This document shows, in pieces, positions 5,564-61,045 of a DNA stretch of 64,000 nt (position 1 is its first letter; each line of letters opens with the position of its first letter). The position numbers and the translations under genes are program-made. The stretch lies in the sequence record LC768500.1; one strand, 5' to 3'. The notes under the pieces are model-generated. The model was not told the origin of the DNA and did not search any database. It saw only the letters and a list, made by a program, of their open reading frames with translations.

Positions 5564-5580
5564 AATTTGACATGGAGTTT

Positions 5581-5598
5581 TTTATAACACTATATGAC
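5581..5598 (+). promoter_or_regulatory. putative phage early promoter
   Basis: TTTATAACAC-TATATGAC; variant of the phiKZ early consensus TATATTAC and of six similar sites in the window. Confidence 0.55.
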
Positions 5599-5650
5599 CA
5601 CAGTGTATGAAAAACAAAATCTCATTTTTAATTTAATAGAGGAAATCATC

Positions 5651-6109
5651 ATGAAACGTTTTATCTCTGCGGCTATTCTTTCCGTTATTGCTATGAGTGC
5701 TACCGCAACTGAAAATACCAACATCTGGGGTTGTGTTACCAACGCTGGCAAAGTCGCCAGGGTTGATCTGGTAGAAGGAACTGGCGGCGTACAAGCAGTC
5801 TACACGTTCGGTAAGGCTGGGAGCGATCCTGAGCTCTCCGTTGCCAAGAAGCTCTCTGACGTTAAGTATACCGAGAAAGAAGCTTACGCCAACGGCATCC
5901 TGCAAACAACGTATTATCAGCTGACTTTCAATAATGGTCAGTACAGCTATATCACTGAACAGTTTAACAAGATCGCACGTCTTTACGTACTCAAGAACGA
6001 TAAAGTGATTTCGACTATTGAGTGCGAAGATATCATCGACGCGGGTGTTCTTGACAGCGAAAACATGATCAAAATCTTTCCTTACCATGAAAAGGTAAAG
6101 GATGAATAA
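5651..6109 (+). CDS. secreted/periplasmic protein with Sec signal peptide
   Basis: start moved to ATG 5651 (GAGGA RBS); MKRFISAAILSVIAMSATA is a typical signal peptide; two Cys in the mature part; host-like codon usage. Confidence 0.75.
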   Translation: MKRFISAAILSVIAMSATATENTNIWGCVTNAGKVARVDLVEGTGGVQAVYTFGKAGSDPELSVAKKLSDVKYTEKEAYANGILQTTYYQLTFNNGQYSYITEQFNKIARLYVLKNDKVISTIECEDIIDAGVLDSENMIKIFPYHEKVKDE

Positions 6110-14589: not shown

Positions 14590-16979
14590 GCAGCATTCGC
14601 CCTACCAATCGCGGTAATGGAGTGAGTATTCCTAACGAAGATCCGAGCATGGGTAATGGTTTCGGTTCACTGGCTACAGGAATGCAACAAAATAGCATGT
14701 ACGGTCAACCGCAACAAATGTTTGATCCGTCTGCGATGATGAAAATGATTTCAACAGGAGGCATGAGCAATAACCCAGCCTCCGGCGGTTGGGATTGGTC
14801 GAACGTAGATAGGCCGAAGAACCCTAATGCTGCATTCTTGGATGAGTTTTTAGGGCATCAGGAAGATGAACTCGAGCACGCGTTGAAAATGGAAGCGCAA
14901 GCTTACGCAACTAAATTCGCAGCGCGTATTATCAACGACATTAAAACGAGAAACACAAGCGGGTATTATAAGTTCTTCCTTAACGCGTATAATATCTTTG
15001 CACTGGTCCCTGACGCCCCTCCTATGATGTGTCCTATCAGGGGGCGGTTCATAGAGGTTATCAAGAATACTCAGGCGGCGCAGTTGCGTATTGCGGGTCG
15101 TGGTGTGACATTCGGTGGTCGTGATTTCGCTTTACAGATCATGGCGCAGAATCCACTTGATCAACGTCTGGTAGAAAACCTCTTCAGTACTGGTATTGCG
15201 AACGCCATGTTTTTAGAAATGGTGGATTGGTTTGCTAAAACGGCTGATGGCAGAGACGCATATAGCAAGCTAACTAATGAACTTAAGTTGACATTGACTA
15301 AATTACCTAAGTTCATTACTTACGCAGCGGAATGCTTCCAGTTCTTCAATATGGATAGCCCGTATAATGACCTGAGTCCAGTCCCTAAAACTTCCCCAAA
15401 CCCAGATCAGAACATGAGTCAGTATGTGGTCAGATCGACGTCAGGGAGCGGAGCGGAGTGGTTAGGGTTCCAGCATTCTACAGAATCTCAACAGCAGAAG
15501 GAGATCCGAGAGATCAATGAATGGGTAGCGAATAATCTTCGTCATCGCCAAGAGTTCCAATATCAACAGGCTCAACAACAAACTCCCGACGCAGCGTATT
15601 GGTCTGGACAGCAGCCACAACAACAGTATAGCTTTGGTGAGCTTCATACTAAACGTGTTGATTTCGAAAACGTCAATCCCGATAACGTGGCGGATTTCTC
15701 TTTAGAGAACTTCAAACGCATCCCAGGGACCGATAAATACGTTGTTGATGAAACCACTTGGAGTTATTTCTCCAAGGCATTCAAACGGGCTTATCGTCCT
15801 TATGGTGAACTTTTTGCCGGAACATACGGAATACGAGTCGTCAAGATCAATTTCGAGCTCAACGACGGTTGGGTGGACAATGTTCTGTTTATAGAAGGAG
15901 TGACTCCAGCCATGGCTTTAGCCAACCCAGCGATGCTACTTCCACATCTCGAGACTGACCAGCAAGGCAACGTGGTCATTGTCGATGAAGTGGTCCTACC
16001 AAAAGAGAAGGACGAAGAAACTGGCATTGAAATGGTTCCGTTACAGAAAGTTAAAGTGATGGAACACGCCCCGACAGCGGTTGTTGTTCCCGAGGTTGTC
16101 ACAGGTGATAGCTTTGGAAATATCGAGACCGTAGTCGATACCATGTTTGAAACCGTTAAACCGTCAACATCAGGATTATTCGGTGTCGCGATCCCGGTAG
16201 AGAACTGGAAACGTTTCTTCGTAGAAGACAGTACGATTGTAGAAGAAATCTACCTTCGTTTGCCTTGGCTGATTAAAGGTAACGGCGGCGGTACTCCACC
16301 TACGTTCTTTGATTTCGTTTCCGAGATACAAAAGACGATGGATCATTACATCGGCTGTGATGAACTTCGTGGATTTGTTGAAACTCATATCACTGACACG
16401 GTTAACCGTTGGTTGGTGGATACGAGAGGTTACGGCGGCAATCGTGATGATCAATATCGCTTCAGAATTAATGGGATCTTCAGCAATCTCAGGAATCTGA
16501 TTAATCACTTAGAGAACAACGACCCTGATACGTTCAGCGTTTTGGTTGATCCTAAACGGTTTAAGCGACTCTTCACTAAGTGTAAATTGTTTGCACCGCG
16601 TGAGACGCGTTCAGCGCTCTTGAATGGCGCTCTGCCGAGTTCTCCAACTCAGGCTGCGATAGCTAAAGAAAACGATAAGAAAGCTATGGTTGTCCTTACA
16701 GACGTCGTAGTGACCCGTATCGGCAATATCCTCGCACCTAATACACAAAAGACCGTTATCAACGTAAAACGTTCAGCGTTCCCAGAGATGTTCTCTTTAA
16801 TCGAACGTTCGTTTGGGAAAACCTCCGATCTGTTACCAGAAGGTGTTGAACAGGTACTGTCTTTTGTCAGTGACGATAGTCTTTGGACTTTCAACACATC
16901 AGGATTTGATTCTAATGTCGCTGTTATGCGTAAGGTGGTCAGAACCCAAGGCATGCTTAATTTTAAATTAATTGAATAA
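14586..16979 (+). CDS. conserved hypothetical protein with low-complexity Q/G/M/S-rich segments
   Basis: 797 aa; ATGA overlap with the nvRNAP subunit gene. Confidence 0.7.
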   Translation: MSSIRPTNRGNGVSIPNEDPSMGNGFGSLATGMQQNSMYGQPQQMFDPSAMMKMISTGGMSNNPASGGWDWSNVDRPKNPNAAFLDEFLGHQEDELEHALKMEAQAYATKFAARIINDIKTRNTSGYYKFFLNAYNIFALVPDAPPMMCPIRGRFIEVIKNTQAAQLRIAGRGVTFGGRDFALQIMAQNPLDQRLVENLFSTGIANAMFLEMVDWFAKTADGRDAYSKLTNELKLTLTKLPKFITYAAECFQFFNMDSPYNDLSPVPKTSPNPDQNMSQYVVRSTSGSGAEWLGFQHSTESQQQKEIREINEWVANNLRHRQEFQYQQAQQQTPDAAYWSGQQPQQQYSFGELHTKRVDFENVNPDNVADFSLENFKRIPGTDKYVVDETTWSYFSKAFKRAYRPYGELFAGTYGIRVVKINFELNDGWVDNVLFIEGVTPAMALANPAMLLPHLETDQQGNVVIVDEVVLPKEKDEETGIEMVPLQKVKVMEHAPTAVVVPEVVTGDSFGNIETVVDTMFETVKPSTSGLFGVAIPVENWKRFFVEDSTIVEEIYLRLPWLIKGNGGGTPPTFFDFVSEIQKTMDHYIGCDELRGFVETHITDTVNRWLVDTRGYGGNRDDQYRFRINGIFSNLRNLINHLENNDPDTFSVLVDPKRFKRLFTKCKLFAPRETRSALLNGALPSSPTQAAIAKENDKKAMVVLTDVVVTRIGNILAPNTQKTVINVKRSAFPEMFSLIERSFGKTSDLLPEGVEQVLSFVSDDSLWTFNTSGFDSNVAVMRKVVRTQGMLNFKLIE

Positions 16980-17023
16980 CCCCACCATCCTAGAACCATT
17001 TAATCGATTAAGTTGTTAACATC

Positions 17024-17052
17024 GGATATCCTTCCTTAGCGGGAGGGTATCC
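17024..17052 (+). terminator. stem-loop / putative terminator
   Basis: GGATATCCTTCC-ttagc-GGGAGGGTATCC, 12 bp including two G-U pairs. Confidence 0.55.
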
Positions 17053-17087
17053 TTTAATAACCATTTCCCACAAAAAAGGAATACGAA

Positions 17088-17723
17088 ATGAATCGTCCAA
17101 TTTTTAAAATTAGTCAGCACGCGCAGTTGTCGATCCCGGCCCTCATCGATGTTACAGAAAATGAAGCGGAATGCTCGTCACTTGTTTACGGCCTCCATCC
17201 TTCCATGACCGGGGTATTCTCTGAACGCCAGAAGGATTCAATGGCAGAGAGTCTTTACCTAATGGGTCAGTACGCCGAAATCATTCCCAGGAATAAGCCG
17301 GAGTGTACGATTGATTATCATCCCATCACTAACGAGCATTACCTTAAATCGTTTAAACATTATTACGAAGCATGGGTTGCTTTGGGTAGAGATGAAGTGG
17401 TGATGCAGGGAGCCACTGTTAGGGTTTCGTCGTTTTTATTATTAAGGACTATGTTCAATGGGGTCATAGGAATTCTACCTTATCTCGACCCCAAAGGACA
17501 TCGGATGCAAGCAAAGGAATACGCTAAATTAGACGATTTGGTTAAACTGACCTACGGCGTGCCCGCTGGGTCATTCTCGGCGACCCCCGATTACCAGGTT
17601 GTTCCTAAAATAGAGGTGCGGGAACAGATCGTGATGAGCTTTACTGACAAATACGGTAACGTCATCACCGTCACCGGAATCGATAGAGAAAAGATGATCG
17701 AACAGATAGAAAAATTAAAGTAA
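17088..17723 (+). CDS. hypothetical protein
   Basis: 211 aa, AAGGA RBS, flanked by hairpins. Confidence 0.65.
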   Translation: MNRPIFKISQHAQLSIPALIDVTENEAECSSLVYGLHPSMTGVFSERQKDSMAESLYLMGQYAEIIPRNKPECTIDYHPITNEHYLKSFKHYYEAWVALGRDEVVMQGATVRVSSFLLLRTMFNGVIGILPYLDPKGHRMQAKEYAKLDDLVKLTYGVPAGSFSATPDYQVVPKIEVREQIVMSFTDKYGNVITVTGIDREKMIEQIEKLK

Positions 17724-17729
17724 TCGTCT

Positions 17730-17761
17730 TCCCTACCACTCCTTAACTGGGGTGGTAGGGA
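17730..17761 (+). terminator. intrinsic terminator
   Basis: TCCCTACCACTCC-ttaact-GGGGTGGTAGGGA, 13 bp with one G-U pair. Confidence 0.75.
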
Positions 17762-17793
17762 GTAAGAAAGCTTTAATTTTTTAACATGAAGAT

Positions 17794-17812
17794 TTTTATA
17801 AGTCGATATCAT
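17794..17812 (+). promoter_or_regulatory. putative phage early promoter
   Basis: TTTTATAAGTC-GATATCAT ahead of the glycine-zipper trio. Confidence 0.55.
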
Positions 17813-17865
17813 TCAGGTGTATAAACAACAAGTATTTTAATTCTTATTCACTAAAGAGGTCCAAA

Positions 17866-18438
17866 ATGGAAATTCGTAAAGATATGATCAATGAAATCGC
17901 CGCTCGTATCATCTCTGGTTGCAACGACGTGGAAGCCAGTGTCCGCGAAAAGCTGCTGCGTAATTTGGTTAATGGTGAGATCTGGCAGTTCGAGCTCAAT
18001 GAAACTGAGCAAGCGGAACTGATCGCGATCGTAAGCAAAGAGTTCGGTATTTCCGATCTGGTCTACGTCGAACCGCAGAAAAACATTTCTGAAGAAGATG
18101 TCGCCAAAGTCGCTGCCAGTGTTAACGGGCATGTCGAACACAAATATCTGAATCTGCGAAATGCGATGGCAGTCGGCGCAGTACTCGGTGCTGGTGCGGC
18201 CATCTTAAAAGAAGGTGCGAACGCAATTAATGCCGGTGCTGGTGTGGTCGGCGCTGCTGTTTCTTACGGCGTGGGTTATCTGGCTGACAAGAAACATATC
18301 GGTATGGGTAATCAGTACGCTGATGTCGCGGCAGGCATTGTTGCCGGTGGCGTTATCGGTGGCGGCGCAGTATTTGGCGCGGGCTTTGTCGCCAAACGTT
18401 TCTTCAGCGATGAAGAAGTTGAAGTTGTTGCAGAGTAA
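17866..18438 (+). CDS. glycine-zipper membrane protein, paralog 1
   Basis: GAGG RBS; soluble N-terminal half, then three GxxxG-rich hydrophobic helices and an acidic tail. Confidence 0.8.
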   Translation: MEIRKDMINEIAARIISGCNDVEASVREKLLRNLVNGEIWQFELNETEQAELIAIVSKEFGISDLVYVEPQKNISEEDVAKVAASVNGHVEHKYLNLRNAMAVGAVLGAGAAILKEGANAINAGAGVVGAAVSYGVGYLADKKHIGMGNQYADVAAGIVAGGVIGGGAVFGAGFVAKRFFSDEEVEVVAE

Positions 18439-18501
18439 TAAACGCATCTGAAATATCCGATGCATCTTAAATTAAACTATCAATAGTAAGGAAATACGAT
18501 C

Positions 18502-18894
18502 ATGAAAAAAGAAAACATTGAACTGACTGGCACTGAACTCGACGAAGCTAAAGCGATGCTGGCTGTTGATGCAGAAACTTCTCTGTTCGACGATATCTGT
18601 GAAAAACTCGGTGGCTACGTAGCTACCGACAAACAGAAAAGCCACGTGAAAGCCGCAGTGATCGGTGGTGTTATCGGCACCGCTCTGAGCATGGCGAGCA
18701 AACCATCTGTCGGCACGCTGATCGGTGGCGTGGTTGGTACCGCAGGTGGCGCTTATGTGGGTAGTCGTATCGCTGATGATCTGAGCAATCAGTTCATTGA
18801 CAAACTGCTCACCGCTGAAATTGGCTTCGTGTGTAGCGCTATCGGCGCATCCATCGGCGGGGCATTAACCCCGAGCAAAGTCGAAGCGGACTAA
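18502..18894 (+). CDS. glycine-zipper membrane protein, paralog 2
   Basis: AAGGA RBS; AAVIGGVIGTAL, GTLIGGVVGTAGGAYVG, SAIGASIGGAL. Confidence 0.8.
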   Translation: MKKENIELTGTELDEAKAMLAVDAETSLFDDICEKLGGYVATDKQKSHVKAAVIGGVIGTALSMASKPSVGTLIGGVVGTAGGAYVGSRIADDLSNQFIDKLLTAEIGFVCSAIGASIGGALTPSKVEAD

Positions 18895-18962
18895 ATCATC
18901 CAGTTCGTTCCACTACCGTTAAATTTTAGGCAACTCAACATCAAAACGTAAGAGGTAATATC

Positions 18963-19358
18963 ATGGATATGGCAAACAAACCTGCAGTTAACAAAGCTGC
19001 CTTGTCAGAAGAAGAAATTCTGAAAATGCTGGCTGGTCACAAATCCACCGATGCTAACTATCGGGTTGGTCGCATTGCTGGTGTGCTGGGCGCAGTTGTC
19101 GCCGGTGCGCATCGGACCGTCACCAATGGGGTTAAACCATCTACGGTGGTAGGTACAGTGGTAGGTGGATTGGTTGGATATAAAACGGGTAAAATGGCAG
19201 ACGGTTTCAGCGGGCTGACCGGAAGTCATTCACCGATTGCAGACGTCGGTGCATTCACAGCAGGGTACGGCGTGGCGCTGGGAATGAGCGCCCTGGCGGG
19301 TACGTTTGATCAGTACATCACACCGCTGTACGAATCAGAAGAAGAAACCGAAGAATAA
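18963..19358 (+). CDS. glycine-zipper membrane protein, paralog 3
   Basis: GAGGT RBS; GRIAGVLGAVVAG, GTVVGGLVGYKTG, AGYGVALGMSALAG; ends ESEEETEE. Confidence 0.8.
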   Translation: MDMANKPAVNKAALSEEEILKMLAGHKSTDANYRVGRIAGVLGAVVAGAHRTVTNGVKPSTVVGTVVGGLVGYKTGKMADGFSGLTGSHSPIADVGAFTAGYGVALGMSALAGTFDQYITPLYESEEETEE

Positions 19359-19364
19359 GAAAGT

Positions 19365-19396
19365 TAACTCCTCTACCCGTAAGGGTAGAGGAGTTA
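19365..19396. terminator. bidirectional terminator
   Basis: TAACTCCTCTACCC-gtaa-GGGTAGAGGAGTTA, 14-bp stem between converging genes. Confidence 0.85.
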
Positions 19397-19414
19397 CTTA
19401 ATTACTTATTTTTT

Positions 19415-22378
19415 TTACTCTGGAAGGGTGTCATCAACTTGGAAGTCGTCTTTCTTATTGCTGTCTTCTTCTGTCTCTGTTTCTTCCTCGGTTTGGTTTT
19501 CTTCTTTGGAAGTATCTGTTCCCGTCTCTTCTTCCTCGGTCGTTCCACCTTCCCCAGGCAAATCTTCCTCTATTGAGAAATCGTCGTCTGTCTGAGTTCC
19601 CTCTTCAGGGGTACCCTCATCAGCAGGTTGGGCGCCGAACTCATTCGCCGGAGGCTGTTCCGCAGGCATAATCTTTTCCAAACGTTTAGCCAGGCGATCG
19701 GTCTCTTTATTCCAGACCTTCATGAACTGTTCTAAGAACATTCCACTGTTGTCTACGTACTGAGATATGTTGTGGATTAACGAATAGATCCCACCTTCTT
19801 TACCCTTGTTACCGATAAGATCGAACGGCATAGGGAGGTTGAATCGATCATAGAGCTCGATCAGATAAGTGCTGCGAATAATGGATTTAGCTTTCTCAAT
19901 ATCCAGACCGCCGTTAGCGTCAACCTTGTTCATGATCATTTCAATCAGGCCCGACGTACCTGACATTTCAACCCACGAGTTTACAAACTGATTGACCGTA
20001 TCGATTTTATCTTTCAGTTTGGTTACTGATTCCTGAGTAGCCGGAGTCGGTAAGGTCACGGTGAGGTTGTTGATAAAGTCAGCCAGGATAACTTCAACGA
20101 TGTGCTCGTTAGTTCCCTCTATCTCTTCGCCGTTATCAGGTTTCCACAACGATTTGTTCTCGTTAATGGTGTCGACCAAACGATTCAACATAACCTGGTT
20201 AACCAACATATCCTTACGTTCGATCTCAGCAACAAAGTCACCCAATACCTTCTGCCAGATCAATGTTTGGTTGCGGAGCATTTCCTGCTCGGCCAATGCT
20301 TCGACCTGGAAGTTGGTTCCTTCTTCTTTATCGTCCAACCAAGTACGTTGGAGCTTAAAGGTGGAGGCGATGTTGTTGAGGAGGTTCTGTCTGGAGGTTT
20401 CGTCAATAGCTTTGAAGTTACCGCGTTCAACCGGTTCCAGAGTTATCTTGGGCCCGACCATCCACGGGTTACCGTTACTATTAACCTCAACGATCAGGGA
20501 TTGGGTCTTCATTGCTTCAACAATGTCGGGTACTGAAACAGTGCCCGAGTTTACTACGTTGTGAAGCGTTGGGTTCACCCTGAAGAACTGCGCCCTGGCC
20601 GTAGCAATCGTGCCATCCGGATCAACGTCATCTTCTTCCAGATCAACCACTAAACGCTGACGAGTTTGAGCTTGATCCAAGTTAGCCAGAATATCAGCAG
20701 TATCTAACGCTGCCAAACGTCCGATATGGAGTTTAGCCTGGTTAGTTAAAGAAGAGCCAATACCAAAGCTATTATAGTCAAACGCGACGTAGGTAAAGTA
20801 TTCGGCCGGAATGTAAAGCACCCGAACACCCTGCTGCTTGAAAGAACGAGCCAGGAAGATCTTCAGGTTAGCTTCAACCAATTCGACAGAAATATTTTTC
20901 CCGCTCACGCCAGAAGCAATTGCCTGGATAAGGGACTTCTCTATTTGATCTTTCGATAACAGGGCGAATTCTGACATATCGAAGTCACAATCAGCACCTT
21001 GCTGAACTTTCTTCAAATTAGCGATAAGTGCGTTAGTCCCACCCGTTTTATTGGGGGTATCGATTTTATCTTTCTGTCCCTTAGAGGACTGATAGAAGTT
21101 AAAGTCCCTCGTGCTTTTTAAGAACTCCCCATTTGACGGATCGAGTAGGGCAAAACCACCGATCAATTTAGTTCGGTCGCCTTCCATATGAACAGGAATA
21201 AACGCTTCACTTGGGATATGATACCGCAAAGGTATTCCATAAACAGAAGTGTCGTAAACCCCAGGACTCCGAATACTAATGGTCTGCCGATGCGGATAGC
21301 TTCGATGCGGATAAATTTCGTTTTGAAGGACTTCTAGCTGGCTCTCTGGCAAAACCTGAGTTTTAGTATCAGCGTTAGGGGTCCCGTTCTTACGTTTAGC
21401 CTTAGAGTCGTCAGGCTCTTTATTCGACTTCTTAGGATCTTGTTTCTTATCCTTGGTTGCCGCGGCCTCTTCTTCCTCTCCCTCGCCTTTTTTCTCTAGC
21501 CGAGATTTAATAAGGGAAGCAAGATCTTCCGTCCCACCAATGTCGTTAACGATCTTCTTCGTTAAAACCTGATTTACGGAACGAAGCGCTAACACCGCTG
21601 GGTTATCGGTTAGTGTGATGCCAAAACCTTCTCCTTCGTCATTCTCGATTAATTCGAACTCAGTAGAGGTGTCTGGCGTGGTGTGGCTAAACAAAGCCTC
21701 TAACCCATGAACCACGTTATTGAGCTGCTTAGGTCCCCTCACCAATCCTTTGTTGATGGCGAGAAACTTACCGTCGACATTTTTAAATTGCTTCTCAATC
21801 TCTGGTTTTATCTGAGCGTTAATGTAACTTTCGTTACCTGTCACTCCGTCTTCTCCAAACTGCTGACCGTTGATAAGGTGATCCAGCGCAGGTCTAGAGA
21901 TGTTCAAAAGCACGTAGGATCCTGTACCGAATAACCCGTCTTTGATGAACTCCGGTAACAGCTTCTCGATTTTATAGTCGCTGGTATAGTAGGTTTCCGT
22001 CTTACGGAGCAACTCTTCATGCAGCTTAGTATTTTTAAATTGAGACCGCAAAGTATCGTGAGTAAGGATCCTTTCCTGTAATCCGTTCGGGTAGAGGAGA
22101 AGCGTCTTCCAGATTAATTCCGCCCGCGAAACATAAGGTGTGATTTCCCTTAAGTCAGTTGCCGCATTGATATTGCTGGCAATGATATCGCTGATCTTTT
22201 TTAATTTGGAAGGTTGGACTTTACGTTCTTTCTCATCCGTATTTCTGGTATGATCTCTCTCGTCCCGAACGAGGTTCCGAACGACGCTTTTTAACGAGGG
22301 GCTGATATTGTTTAAATTACCCCTGAGTTTGGTTTGATCGAGGTAATCATATCCTCGGGTTGAACGCGTTCTATTCAT
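19415..22378 (-). CDS. portal protein precursor (phiKZ gp129-like)
   Basis: 987 aa on the opposite strand, a few genes after MCP/nvRNAP; G-x-E sites in the N-terminal region; long acidic C-terminal tail; call rests mainly on size and synteny. Confidence 0.72.
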   Translation of the reverse strand: MNRTRSTRGYDYLDQTKLRGNLNNISPSLKSVVRNLVRDERDHTRNTDEKERKVQPSKLKKISDIIASNINAATDLREITPYVSRAELIWKTLLLYPNGLQERILTHDTLRSQFKNTKLHEELLRKTETYYTSDYKIEKLLPEFIKDGLFGTGSYVLLNISRPALDHLINGQQFGEDGVTGNESYINAQIKPEIEKQFKNVDGKFLAINKGLVRGPKQLNNVVHGLEALFSHTTPDTSTEFELIENDEGEGFGITLTDNPAVLALRSVNQVLTKKIVNDIGGTEDLASLIKSRLEKKGEGEEEEAAATKDKKQDPKKSNKEPDDSKAKRKNGTPNADTKTQVLPESQLEVLQNEIYPHRSYPHRQTISIRSPGVYDTSVYGIPLRYHIPSEAFIPVHMEGDRTKLIGGFALLDPSNGEFLKSTRDFNFYQSSKGQKDKIDTPNKTGGTNALIANLKKVQQGADCDFDMSEFALLSKDQIEKSLIQAIASGVSGKNISVELVEANLKIFLARSFKQQGVRVLYIPAEYFTYVAFDYNSFGIGSSLTNQAKLHIGRLAALDTADILANLDQAQTRQRLVVDLEEDDVDPDGTIATARAQFFRVNPTLHNVVNSGTVSVPDIVEAMKTQSLIVEVNSNGNPWMVGPKITLEPVERGNFKAIDETSRQNLLNNIASTFKLQRTWLDDKEEGTNFQVEALAEQEMLRNQTLIWQKVLGDFVAEIERKDMLVNQVMLNRLVDTINENKSLWKPDNGEEIEGTNEHIVEVILADFINNLTVTLPTPATQESVTKLKDKIDTVNQFVNSWVEMSGTSGLIEMIMNKVDANGGLDIEKAKSIIRSTYLIELYDRFNLPMPFDLIGNKGKEGGIYSLIHNISQYVDNSGMFLEQFMKVWNKETDRLAKRLEKIMPAEQPPANEFGAQPADEGTPEEGTQTDDDFSIEEDLPGEGGTTEEEETGTDTSKEENQTEEETETEEDSNKKDDFQVDDTLPE

Positions 22379-57544: not shown

Positions 57545-57576
57545 TACTCCTACTCCCGTAATAGGGAGTAGGAGTA
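57545..57576 (+). terminator. intrinsic terminator
   Basis: TACTCCTACTCCC-gtaata-GGGAGTAGGAGTA, perfect 13-bp stem. Confidence 0.8.
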
Positions 57577-60755: not shown

Positions 60756-60772
60756 TATTTTACTTGTATTCT

Positions 60773-60790
60773 TTTTTGGATCGATATTAT
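60773..60790 (+). promoter_or_regulatory. putative phage early promoter
   Basis: TTTTTGGATC-GATATTAT. Confidence 0.5.
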
Positions 60791-60829
60791 TTATGTGTAA
60801 ACCTCAATAACTTTTTAGGAATCAACATC

Positions 60830-61045
60830 ATGAATGGTCTTTTTGGAACAGGTTGCTTGTTGTTAGGTGCTGCGGTGTATTTCTTCCTGAAGTACCTGGA
60901 ACTGCGTAAAGATTTTAAAGAGAATAAGATTAAAGACAAGGGTCGGGCGTCTGGGTATAAAAATGCCTATTTCTCTTTAACCATTTGCGTTTTGGGTCTG
61001 GGCGTCTTTTTAATGGTTAATGGGACTCTGTTGGAGATCAGATAA
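60830..61045 (+). CDS. small two-TM membrane protein
   Basis: start moved to ATG 60830 (AGGA RBS); two hydrophobic segments around a Lys-rich loop. Confidence 0.65.
   Translation: MNGLFGTGCLLLGAAVYFFLKYLELRKDFKENKIKDKGRASGYKNAYFSLTICVLGLGVFLMVNGTLLEIR

What the first reader, a model, noticed from the sequence alone, without database searches (positions are those of the whole stretch)
17794..19396. Tandem trio of glycine-zipper membrane proteins in their own early operon
Seen: three adjacent paralogs (190, 130, 131 aa), each with three GxxxG/GxxxA-rich hydrophobic helices, a charged N-terminal leader and an acidic or short polar tail. They have strong RBSs and host-optimised codons like the MCP, one early-promoter motif and one terminator, and are inserted next to the portal gene. 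No signal peptides are visible. Known: glycine-zipper helices oligomerise in membranes in pore-forming bacteriocins (e.g. two-component CdzC/D type). Inference: a possibly undescribed hetero-oligomeric membrane system, such as early-infection-vesicle or membrane remodelling, superinfection exclusion, or a phage-encoded pore toxin. I cannot assign it to a named family.
Basis: partly seen in the sequence, partly recalled or inferred. Interest (0 to 1): 0.7.

Follow-up and report, generated by a model that had tools for sequence, protein, structure and literature searches.

The report
Early glycine-zipper protein trio, jumbo phage
A nucleus-forming Klebsiella jumbo phage carries a self-contained, apparently early and very strongly expressed operon of three related small glycine-zipper proteins that probably sit in a membrane; they fit no named family and their role early in infection is unknown.

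Summary
The window is Klebsiella phage phiKp_32, a Miami-like chimallin-encoding jumbo phage. Three genes (17866-18438, 18502-18894, 18963-19358, + strand) are real: pN/pS is 0.06-0.17. They have the highest small-xxx-small zipper density of about 279 genes, and their codon bias lies at or above the genome's 95th percentile. BLASTP does not detect paralogy; profile comparison does (96-97% probability). The A-B-C order recurs in three divergent metagenomic lineages. Single C-like genes occupy the same slot in RisingSun and EL, also with very high codon bias. The unit lies between two strong hairpin terminators. Its upstream block is conserved better than the proteins and belongs to a family of 12-18 sites that also precede the PhuZ and chimallin genes, so it is probably the early (virion RNA polymerase) promoter class. 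No Pfam, NCBIfam, PADLOC, PDB or Foldseek match reaches significance; only sub-threshold glycine-zipper hits appear. Best reading: an abundant, early, membrane-embedded hetero-oligomer that modifies the host envelope, with superinfection exclusion or permeability control as my leading guess. Membrane location, assembly and function are all inferred. Rivals are holin-like lysis control, action on the early-infection vesicle, a virion protein, and a soluble bundle. It is a new variant of a known kind, of moderate interest.

The parts
17729..17762 (+). Hairpin terminator that closes the upstream 211-aa gene and isolates the trio
   Evidence: 14-bp stem followed by a T-run; dG -28.1 kcal/mol, z -5.7 against shuffles. 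Divergent relatives L016 and L018 have a hairpin of different sequence at the same place.
17781..17830 (+). Conserved promoter block, probably the early (virion RNA polymerase) class
   Evidence: Nearly invariant in 6 Miami-like phages. Largely kept in L016 and L018, whose proteins are only 24-50% identical. Member of a family of 12-18 plus-strand sites, each 70-125 nt upstream of a gene start, including the PhuZ and chimallin genes.
17853..17859 (+). Shine-Dalgarno site of gene A
   Evidence: AAAGAGG lies 6 nt before the ATG. Comparable sites precede genes B and C.
17866..18438 (+). Gene A, 190 aa: helical N-terminal domain of about 95 aa, three glycine-zipper helices and an acidic tail
   Evidence: ORF; pN/pS 0.06; Fop 0.62. 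Orthologues P0009, P0014 and the genes in L018 and L020. AF2 model is all-helical but of low confidence, pLDDT 54.5.
18502..18894 (+). Gene B, 130 aa: polar leader, glycine-zipper helix-loop-helix, third helix
   Evidence: ORF; pN/pS 0.17; Fop 0.72, fourth highest in the genome. Only sub-threshold glycine-zipper Pfam and NCBIfam hits. Orthologue P0011 and the genes in L016 and L018.
18963..19358 (+). Gene C, 131 aa: polar leader, three glycine-zipper helices, strongly acidic tail; closest to the single-copy genes of RisingSun and EL
   Evidence: ORF; pN/pS 0.11; Fop 0.60. AF2 pLDDT is 74.9, with the core at 80-93 and helices at 35-55, 59-86 and 91-113. hhalign to RisingSun gp87 gives 88.6% and to EL gp82 71%. 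Foldseek BFVD hits EL Q2Z0Z9 (E 3.9e-3) and the RisingSun protein (probability 0.98).
19365..19396 (.). Bidirectional hairpin terminator shared with the convergent portal gene
   Evidence: 14-bp stem, dG -27.5 kcal/mol, z -6.6. T-runs follow it on both strands.

Best explanation
The locus is one polycistronic unit: promoter, genes A, B and C, then a terminator. It encodes three paralogous small proteins. Each has a polar cytoplasmic leader, a glycine-zipper helical hairpin, a third glycine-zipper helix and an acidic tail. Shown here: the genes are under purifying selection; the glycines of the GxxxG motifs are the most conserved positions; gene order and very high codon bias are kept across divergent lineages; and the promoter belongs to the same family as those of the PhuZ and chimallin genes. 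Inferred: the unit is transcribed within minutes of infection by the injected virion RNA polymerase and translated in large amounts. With no signal peptide, the proteins would insert from the cytoplasmic side into the inner membrane, or into membrane derived from it. There they would pack helix to helix through the zippers into an A-B-C hetero-oligomer, where phages with one gene would form a homo-oligomer. The most likely role is early modification of the host envelope. My leading guess is exclusion of incoming DNA from superinfecting phages, or control of membrane permeability. The basis for that guess is that the same promoter family also drives several other small genes with a signal peptide or transmembrane segment, which resembles the early envelope programme of T-even phages.
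For: Real genes: pN/pS 0.06, 0.17 and 0.11, and invariant length in 6 phages. Architecture is kept in 16 orthologues, and the invariant columns are mostly zipper glycines. Paralogy: hhalign 95.9-97.3%, E 6e-9 to 3e-11. Similarly composed Kc263 gp72 and N1M2 gp104 score under 1%, which serves as a natural composition control. The A-B-C order recurs in L016, L018 and L020. Single unit: strong hairpins on both sides and unstructured inner spacers. Promoter: the block is conserved beyond the level of the proteins; there are 12-18 sites at a fixed distance from gene starts; these include the PhuZ gene (PDB E 3e-19) and the chimallin/PhuN gene (E 1.8e-4). In RNAP-encoding jumbo phages only early promoters are detectable as conserved motifs (PMC7598289), and phiKZ gp54 carries the early motif (PMC8244752). 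The MCP upstream region lacks the motif. High expression: Fop at or above the 95th percentile, likewise in L016 and L018, in pTD1 gp57/58, and in RisingSun gp87 at 0.84 against 0.82 for its MCP. Membrane leaning: three stretches with no polar residue on any face, too apolar for a soluble monomer of about 90 residues. The only family signals are glycine-zipper membrane domains. The weak Foldseek neighbours are small membrane proteins and holins. Envelope programme: the same promoter family precedes a 41-aa single-TM protein, a 71-aa two-TM protein and two proteins with Sec-type signal peptides.
Against: There is no direct evidence of membrane association, oligomerisation or any phenotype. Hydrophobic stretches 1 and 2 are short (12-20 aa) and glycine-rich; the Kyte-Doolittle 19-residue maxima are only 1.3-1.9, so full membrane spans are uncertain. 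The early class is assigned by analogy with phiKZ and no transcript data exist for this phage group. Codon bias at the level of chimallin or the MCP is higher than I would expect for a typical exclusion protein, and fits a stoichiometric structural role better. The family is absent from the same slot in phiKZ, PhiPA3, RAY and Goslar. No homology to any known exclusion protein was found.
Confidence: 0.4

Rival explanations
1. They act on the early phage infection (EPI) vesicle. Made early and in bulk, the proteins would insert from the cytoplasm into the vesicle membrane. There they would open or remodel it, so that the genome can pass to the nascent chimallin nucleus or RNA can leave.
For: Early promoter class shared with the chimallin gene. 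Very high codon bias fits a stoichiometric structural role. The proteins are glycine-zipper and probably membrane-active, with no signal peptide. How the vesicle bilayer is shaped and resolved is stated to be unknown (bioRxiv 10.64898/2026.04.21.720040).
Against: The family is not found in phiKZ, PhiPA3, Goslar or RAY at this locus, and the exhaustive profile search found only 8 proteins, although these phages also form vesicles. The vesicle forms and exports the first mRNAs before any new protein exists. Nothing in the sequence separates vesicle membrane from inner membrane as a target.
Confidence: 0.13
2. They form a holin/antiholin-type lysis-timing set. The three-helix membrane proteins would accumulate in the inner membrane and trigger or restrain hole formation.
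For: Three hydrophobic helices followed by a charged tail. The weak Foldseek BFVD neighbours include many annotated holins (E 0.5-2). P0009 has a sub-threshold hit to Phage_holin_5_1 (15.4 bits against a cut-off of 22.4). To my knowledge holins of this phage family are poorly defined.
Against: The promoter class is shared with early genes and is absent upstream of the MCP. The N-terminal leaders are long, 25-140 aa. The tails are acidic where holins usually have basic ones. No endolysin or spanin gene is adjacent. All holin matches are non-significant.
Confidence: 0.1
3. They are virion-borne proteins, either internal or ejected, whose glycine-zipper helices enter the host membrane during DNA delivery, as the zipper segments of tape-measure proteins do.
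For: The genes lie inside the structural-gene region next to the portal gene. Codon bias is close to that of the MCP. There are weak local PHROG matches to zipper segments of tape-measure and large unknown proteins (E 0.003-0.09).
Against: The genes have their own early-class promoter and are insulated by terminators from the flanking structural genes. RisingSun gp87 is not among the 31 proteins found by lysate mass spectrometry (PMC6034870); this is weak evidence, because the protein yields few tryptic peptides. The PHROG matches cover only 45-50 residues of proteins longer than 700 aa.
Confidence: 0.1
4. They are not membrane proteins. They would be soluble helical bundles whose glycine/alanine faces drive assembly into a large cytoplasmic oligomer or lattice.
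For: AF2 folds C131 into a compact three-helix unit with a confident core. The hydrophobic stretches are short and glycine-rich. No signal peptide is present.
Against: The three helices carry no polar residues on any face over 12-23 residues, which is hard to reconcile with solubility. All family-level signals come from membrane glycine-zipper domains.
Confidence: 0.1
5. They are an exported glycine-zipper bacteriocin-like toxin of the CdzC/CdzD or class II type.
For: Glycine-zipper composition. A sub-threshold Bacteriocin_IIc hit for B130 (E 0.024).
Against: The score is 15 bits against a cut-off of 27.1. The leaders are long, acidic and helical and are not double-glycine leaders. No transporter, peptidase or immunity gene lies in the unit or beside it. 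A lytic phage has no evident use for such a toxin early in infection.
Confidence: 0.03

Closest known systems
Glycine zipper 2TM / YMGG / Gly-zipper_Omp domains (Pfam PF05433, PF13441, PF13488; bacterial lipoproteins such as SlyB/Pcp, OsmB, YiaD)
   Same: A helix, a short loop and a second helix with repeated GxxxG. The best family-level signals for B130 and its relatives fall on exactly this hairpin.
   Different: All scores are below the curated cut-offs. The phage proteins have no lipoprotein signal peptide or lipobox. They have a long polar leader, a third zipper helix and an acidic tail. They are phage-encoded and tandemly triplicated.
GlsB/YeaQ/YmgE small inner-membrane stress proteins (Pfam PF04226, 'transglycosylase associated')
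   Same: Small proteins built from three glycine-rich hydrophobic helices. Weak hits for B130 and P0011.
   Different: Hits are far below threshold (10-15 bits against 25.3). The bacterial proteins have no N-terminal leader or acidic tail, as far as I know.
Class I phage holins
   Same: Three hydrophobic helices and a charged C-terminal tail. Many holins appear among the weak structural neighbours.
   Different: No significant match. The promoter class is early, the leader is long, the tail is acidic, and there is no lysis-gene neighbourhood.
T4 Imm and Sp (early membrane proteins that exclude superinfecting phage), from my own knowledge
   Same: Small, early-expressed phage proteins aimed at the envelope. 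The wider early regulon here also contains several genes with a signal peptide or transmembrane segment.
   Different: No sequence or fold relationship was detected. The three-paralogue set and extreme codon bias are not features of Imm or Sp.
Single-copy glycine-zipper genes of other chimallin-encoding phages: RisingSun gp87 and EL gp82, and more weakly Vibrio phage pTD1 gp57/gp58
   Same: Same slot before the portal gene, same three-helix layout and the same high codon bias. RisingSun has the same arrangement of terminator, promoter-like block, gene and terminator.
   Different: One or two copies instead of three. Homology to group C is probable but not certain (hhalign 71-89%), and homology of the pTD1 genes to group B is marginal (52-55%). 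All are annotated as hypothetical.

Membership tests
Pfam glycine-zipper families (PF13441 Gly-zipper_YMGG, PF13488 Gly-zipper_Omp, PF05433 Glycine zipper 2TM) | Score at or above the family's gathering cut-off | tested here: not met
   B130 scores 23.3 against 28.9, 21.5 against 25 and 14.4 against 24.2. A190 and C131 have no hit. Relatives P0010, P0011 and P0013 are also sub-threshold.
Pfam glycine-zipper families (PF13441, PF13488, PF05433) | Helix-loop-helix with conserved GxxxG repeats | tested here: met
   The invariant columns in the orthologue alignments are chiefly glycines spaced i, i+4, for example four in register in helix 2 of group C. Zipper density is the highest in the genome.
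Outer-membrane glycine-zipper lipoproteins (SlyB/Pcp, OsmB, YiaD type) | N-terminal lipoprotein signal peptide with a lipobox cysteine | tested here: not met
   The N-termini are polar or charged with no hydrophobic stretch in the first 25 or more residues. The YiaD_Gzip_OmpA hit is 20.1 bits against a cut-off of 175.
Class I holins | Significant match to a holin family model or structure | tested here: not met
   No Pfam or PHROG holin hit for the window proteins. P0009 scores 15.4 against 22.4 for Phage_holin_5_1. Foldseek holin hits have E 0.5-2.
Class I holins | Late expression and linkage to endolysin or spanin genes | tested here: not met
   The promoter family is shared with the PhuZ and chimallin genes and is absent before the MCP. 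The neighbours are a gp124-like gene, a 211-aa unknown and the portal gene. Timing itself was not measured.
Class I holins | Three full transmembrane spans with a basic cytoplasmic C-tail | tested here: inconclusive
   Three apolar stretches are present, but two are only 12-20 aa long. The tails carry a net charge of -1 to -7 in most orthologues.
Class II / CdzC-CdzD type glycine-zipper bacteriocins | Double-glycine leader and match to the bacteriocin model | tested here: not met
   Bacteriocin_IIc scores 15 bits against 27.1. The leaders are 25-140 aa, helical and acidic.
Class II / CdzC-CdzD type glycine-zipper bacteriocins | Adjacent export, processing and immunity genes | tested here: not met
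   The unit holds only the three genes between two terminators, and the flanking genes are phage structural or unknown genes.
GlsB/YeaQ/YmgE (PF04226) | Score at or above the gathering cut-off | tested here: not met
   B130 scores 10.3 and P0011 14.8, against a cut-off of 25.3.
Anti-phage defence or known exclusion proteins (PADLOC, PHROGs) | Match to any model | tested here: not met
   PADLOC gave no hit. PHROGs gave only weak hits (E at or above 0.003) to families of unknown function or to local segments of tape-measure proteins.
Early (virion RNA polymerase) regulon of chimallin-encoding jumbo phages | Conserved A/T-rich promoter motif at a fixed distance upstream, shared with known early genes | tested here: met
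   The block at 17781-17830 is conserved in divergent relatives. It belongs to a family of 12-18 sites 70-125 nt before gene starts, including the PhuZ and chimallin genes. This agrees with the description of early promoters in PMC7598289 and PMC8244752.
Early (virion RNA polymerase) regulon of chimallin-encoding jumbo phages | Transcription in the first minutes of infection, independent of new protein synthesis | not testable with these tools
   No transcriptome of a Miami-like phage was found in the paper library.

The most novel reading that the evidence does not exclude
The trio, together with the single-copy relatives in the RisingSun and EL lineages, could be the phage-made membrane component that acts on the early-infection vesicle. 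In this reading the abundant early glycine-zipper proteins insert from the cytoplasm into the vesicle bilayer and open or reshape it, so that the genome is handed over to the chimallin nucleus. It would be the first phage protein family assigned to that step.
Probability: 0.12. Interest if true: 0.9.

Novelty: new variant of a known kind. Interest (0 to 1): 0.55.

Why it matters
Nucleus-forming jumbo phages start infection inside a lipid vesicle. Which phage proteins touch membranes during the first minutes is an open question. This analysis identifies a family of small, probably membrane-embedded proteins that sit in the same promoter class as chimallin and PhuZ. Their codon bias rivals the major capsid protein in at least four lineages, and they are kept at a fixed genomic slot. 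They are all annotated as hypothetical, and sequence searches of billions of proteins barely find them. Whatever they do, these phages appear to make a great deal of them early, so they are concrete candidates for descriptive follow-up. The promoter family also outlines an early set of genes aimed at the envelope that has not been described for this group. If the proteins turn out to be an ordinary exclusion or lysis-timing device, the finding is a useful annotation and not a surprise.

Tried and rejected
- Pairwise BLASTP among the three proteins was not significant. It was superseded by shuffle-controlled alignment and profile comparison.
- tblastn against 50,697 phage records and the word-indexed search of 5.8 billion proteins found only near-identical Miami-like relatives.
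- The exhaustive profile search of 1.84 billion representatives found 8 proteins in all.
- A pattern-plus-tblastn scan of IMG/VR with the group C alignment found nothing.
- The profile search against PDB sequences found nothing at E up to 10. Foldseek against the PDB had a best E of 2.5.
- The AF2 model of A190 was too poor (pLDDT 54.5) to use for fold search.
- PADLOC gave no hits. Rfam gave nothing meaningful in 16900-19500.
- The sigma-70 consensus scan gave no more sites than shuffles.
- The 211-aa upstream gene is not detectably related to phiKZ gp125.
- Kc263 gp72 and N1M2 gp104 occupy the same slot with a similar layout but show no detectable homology. I treat them as possible analogues only.
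- Literature searches for the phage name, for glycine zippers in jumbo phages and for EL gp82 returned nothing relevant.
Full report
**Identity and observation.** Window 17000-19500 is 100% identical to Klebsiella phage phiKp_32 (LC768500.1; window position = record position minus 62000). It is 90-96% identical to Klebsiella phages Miami, KPN8 and YC1, Raoultella phage VB_ZK_P1 and a phage labelled Stenotrophomonas BUCTxx100. These are jumbo phages of about 250 kb; Miami is used in the literature as a distant relative of RAY in alignments of nucleus-forming phage proteins. The three ORFs are exactly as described: A at 17866-18438 (190 aa), B at 18502-18894 (130 aa) and C at 18963-19358 (131 aa), all on the plus strand. 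Upstream lie a 797-aa gene (phrog_13213) and a 211-aa gene of unknown function. Downstream, convergent on the minus strand, is a 987-aa gene (phrog_3004). It is homologous to phiKZ gp129 and PhiPA3 gp148 and is annotated as portal in two relatives.

**The genes are real and unusual.**
- Among the six Miami-like phages all three genes keep their exact length. pN/pS is 0.06, 0.17 and 0.11, against 0.33 for the 211-aa neighbour.
- Each protein has a polar leader with no signal-like hydrophobic start, three stretches free of charged or strongly polar residues, and an acidic or short tail.
- Across about 279 crude gene calls in the genome the three rank first to third for small-xxx-small-xxx-small density: 10.8, 9.9 and 4.7 per 100 residues, with 4.1 for the next gene.
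- I measured codon bias as the fraction of codons preferred in highly expressed enterobacterial genes; the list comes from my own knowledge. It is 0.62, 0.72 and 0.60, against a genome median of 0.47 and a 95th percentile of 0.60.
- Gene B ranks fourth in the genome, behind a 421-aa gene, the major capsid protein and the chimallin candidate.

**Paralogy.** BLASTP with composition correction shows nothing. Smith-Waterman scores against shuffles that keep local composition give z = 5.8 for B-C and 4.4 for A-C, but only 1.1 for A-B. After divergent orthologues were found, profile-profile comparison of the three orthologue groups gave 95.9-97.3% probability (E 6e-9 to 3e-11). The alignments are collinear from the end of the leader through the helices. 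Two similarly composed three-helix proteins from the same slot of other phages, Kc263 gp72 and N1M2 gp104, score below 1% against all three profiles. Composition alone therefore does not explain the match. I accept the three as paralogues.

**Relatives and synteny.**
- Word-indexed and tblastn searches found only near-identical proteins.
- An exhaustive profile search of 1.84 billion representatives returned eight proteins. Six are divergent, at 24-50% identity.
- Their contigs show the same order in three further lineages: the 797-aa gene, a gene of about 200 aa, A, B, C, then the convergent portal gene. L016 and L018 are complete. L020 is cut within gene A.
- In more distant chimallin-encoding phages the slot between the gp124-like gene and the portal gene varies. 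It holds a single glycine-zipper gene in RisingSun (gp87) and EL (gp82), and two in Vibrio phage pTD1.
- RisingSun gp87 and EL gp82 match group C by hhalign (88.6% and 71%) and by Foldseek on the AF2 model of C131. For EL the Foldseek E is 3.9e-3 with probability 1.0; for RisingSun the probability is 0.98.
- pTD1 gp57 and gp58 match group B only marginally, at 52-55%.
- phiKZ, PhiPA3, RAY and Goslar have no such gene in the slot.
- The likely history is an old single C-like gene that expanded to three in the Miami lineage and its metagenomic relatives.

**Transcription unit.** A 14-bp hairpin with a T-run follows the 211-aa gene (17729-17762; -28.1 kcal/mol, z -5.7). A second hairpin follows gene C and faces the portal gene (19365-19396; -27.5 kcal/mol, z -6.6). 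The two spacers inside the unit have no significant structure. All three genes have good Shine-Dalgarno sites. Between the first hairpin and gene A lies a block of about 50 nt (17781-17830). It is almost invariant in the six close phages and largely conserved in L016 and L018, whose hairpins differ in sequence and whose proteins are only 24-50% identical.

**Promoter family.**
- Scanning the whole public record with a strict pattern, and then with an iterated weight matrix, gave 12 high-scoring and 6 weaker sites. All are on the plus strand, and all but one of the weaker sites lie 70-125 nt upstream of a gene start.
- One shuffle per round set the threshold, which the 12 high-scoring sites exceed by more than 20 bits.
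- The genes served include a PhuZ homologue (PDB match to PHIKZ039 and PhuZ201, E 3e-19 to 2e-16).
- They also include a 670-aa protein with Fop 0.79 whose only PDB match is PhiPA3 PhuN, that is chimallin (E 1.8e-4).
- The review PMC7598289 states that in RNA-polymerase-encoding jumbo phages a conserved motif can be found computationally only for early promoters. PMC8244752 describes the phiKZ early motif as an extended -10 element with a T-rich part upstream, and finds it at gp54.
- The region upstream of the capsid gene lacks the block.
- I therefore assign the trio to the early class. This is by analogy and not by measurement.
- The three strongest copies are those of the trio, window 5567-5610 and record 17855. 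They share an extra upstream part that resembles a bacterial -35 hexamer. I cannot explain this.

**High expression is a family trait.** Fop is 0.72, 0.74 and 0.56 for A, B and C in L016, against 0.44-0.46 for their neighbours. In L018 it is 0.70, 0.77 and 0.58, against 0.42-0.51. pTD1 gp57 and gp58 score 0.60 and 0.67. RisingSun gp87 scores 0.84, against 0.82 for its capsid protein. RisingSun gp87 also sits between a hairpin terminator followed by an A/T-rich promoter-like block and a terminator facing the portal gene. It was not among the 31 phage proteins detected in a crude-lysate mass spectrometry study (PMC6034870). That is weak evidence, because the protein would yield few tryptic peptides.

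**Comparison with known families.**
- Pfam gives only sub-threshold hits, all to glycine-zipper membrane domains and all for B130 or relatives. YMGG scores 23.3 against 28.9, Gly-zipper_Omp 21.5 against 25 and Glycine zipper 2TM 14.4 against 24.2. Bacteriocin_IIc, DUF456 and PF04226 are weaker still.
- NCBIfam gives weak hits to the zipper part of YiaD-type lipoproteins.
- PHROGs gives weak local hits to zipper segments of tape-measure-like proteins and to small families of unknown function.
- PADLOC, PDB sequence search and Foldseek against the PDB give nothing significant.
- AF2 predicts C131 as three long helices with a confident core (pLDDT 74.9 overall, 80-93 for residues 31-120). The A190 model is all-helical but unreliable.
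- In the viral structure library, after the jumbo-phage relatives, the weak neighbours are mostly annotated holins.
- The invariant columns of the orthologue alignments are mainly the GxxxG glycines plus a few flanking charged residues. Helix-helix packing through the zippers therefore appears to be the feature under selection.

**Interpretation.** The sequence shows an insulated three-gene unit of paralogues, strongly selected, strongly codon-optimised, and carrying a promoter of the chimallin/PhuZ class. Membrane insertion from the cytoplasmic face is inferred. The grounds are three helices apolar on all faces, no signal peptide, and resemblance only to membrane zipper domains. Hetero-oligomer formation is also inferred, from the conserved order, co-transcription and subfunctionalised paralogues. 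The biological role is my least secure step. The same promoter family drives a 41-aa single-span protein (Fop 0.82), a 71-aa two-span protein and two proteins with Sec-type signal peptides. This suggests an early programme aimed at the envelope. In well-studied lytic phages such programmes serve mainly to exclude superinfecting phages and to control lysis (my own knowledge). I favour envelope modification of that kind at about 0.4.

The very high codon bias fits a bulk structural role better. That keeps alive the more novel idea that the proteins act on the early-infection vesicle (about 0.12), although the family's absence from the phiKZ clade argues against a universal role. Holin-like, virion-borne, soluble-bundle and bacteriocin-like readings are less likely, for the reasons given under each rival.

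**Novelty.** Small glycine-zipper membrane proteins are a known kind. This family fails the thresholds of every curated glycine-zipper model and lacks the lipoprotein features of the bacterial ones. It is confined to one branch of chimallin-encoding phages, and it combines triplication, an early promoter class and capsid-level codon bias. I rate it a new variant of a known kind, of moderate interest.

**Procedural notes.**
- For the genome-wide motif and codon scans my scripts placed the fetched pieces of the public record LC768500.1 side by side in memory, in record coordinates. Nothing was altered, printed whole or saved.
- Degenerate search patterns and a weight matrix were used only to locate promoter-like sites.
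- Consensus lines printed by the alignment tools were not used.
- The hydropathy scale and the list of preferred codons came from my own knowledge of standard tables.

Noticed in passing
window 5567-5610 and 5651-6109 (+): A second strong copy of the same promoter block lies here. The long ORF from 5594 overlaps it, so the likelier start is the ATG at 5651, which has a good ribosome-binding site. That start gives a 152-aa protein with a Sec-type signal peptide and raised codon bias (Fop 0.59). It has no Pfam hit.
   Followed up: partly
window 60759-60808 and 60830-61045 (+): Another member of the promoter family precedes a 71-aa protein with two hydrophobic segments.
   Followed up: partly
L022 17855-18057 (record LC768500.1): This is the third strong promoter copy. 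It drives a 41-aa single-span membrane peptide with the highest codon bias measured here (Fop 0.82). A related site at record 152673 precedes a 138-aa protein with a signal peptide. The early regulon seems rich in products aimed at the envelope.
   Followed up: partly
L022 2770-3732 and 11014-13026 (record LC768500.1): Both genes are annotated as hypothetical. The first is a PhuZ homologue (PDB E 3e-19). The second is the probable chimallin (weak match to PhiPA3 PhuN, Fop 0.79). Both carry the promoter block.
   Followed up: yes
window 17781-17795, window 5567-5581, record 17855-17869: Only the three strongest promoter copies share an upstream extension resembling a bacterial -35 hexamer, about 18 nt before the A/T-rich core. 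Whether this marks a promoter subclass or dual recognition is unexplained.
   Followed up: no
L013 1-394 (Stenotrophomonas phage BUCTxx100): A gene annotated as 'mobile element protein' lies immediately upstream of the 211-aa gene in this phage, but not at that position in the window or in KPN8, YC1 or VB_ZK_P1. phiKp_32 itself has an annotated IS200/IS605 TnpB at record 147036-148172.
   Followed up: no
record OR529409.1: A phage labelled as infecting Stenotrophomonas maltophilia is about 95% identical here to Klebsiella phages. That is an odd host label for such a close relative.
   Followed up: no
window 17088-17723 (+): The 211-aa gene upstream evolves much faster than its neighbours (pN/pS 0.33, 68 variable positions). 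It has its own terminators and no detectable relation to phiKZ gp125, which holds the equivalent position.
   Followed up: partly
whole record LC768500.1; e.g. window 57546-57572: Many intergenic hairpin terminators reuse nearly the same stem sequence. One 12-mer and its complement occur 6-7 times in the genome, which suggests a repeated terminator module.
   Followed up: no
L005 8825-9439 (Kosakonia phage Kc263 gp72) and L007 7947-8609 (Klebsiella phage N1M2 gp104): These two proteins are homologous to each other (Smith-Waterman z 13-21). They occupy the same slot before the portal gene and have a polar leader, three Gly/Ala-rich hydrophobic segments and an acidic tail. They show no detectable homology to the trio, so they may be analogues or homologues diverged beyond recognition.
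   Followed up: partly
L024 37912-38202 (record 163811-164101): A gene annotated as a HigA-family antitoxin sits among the small genes of the presumed early region.
   Followed up: no
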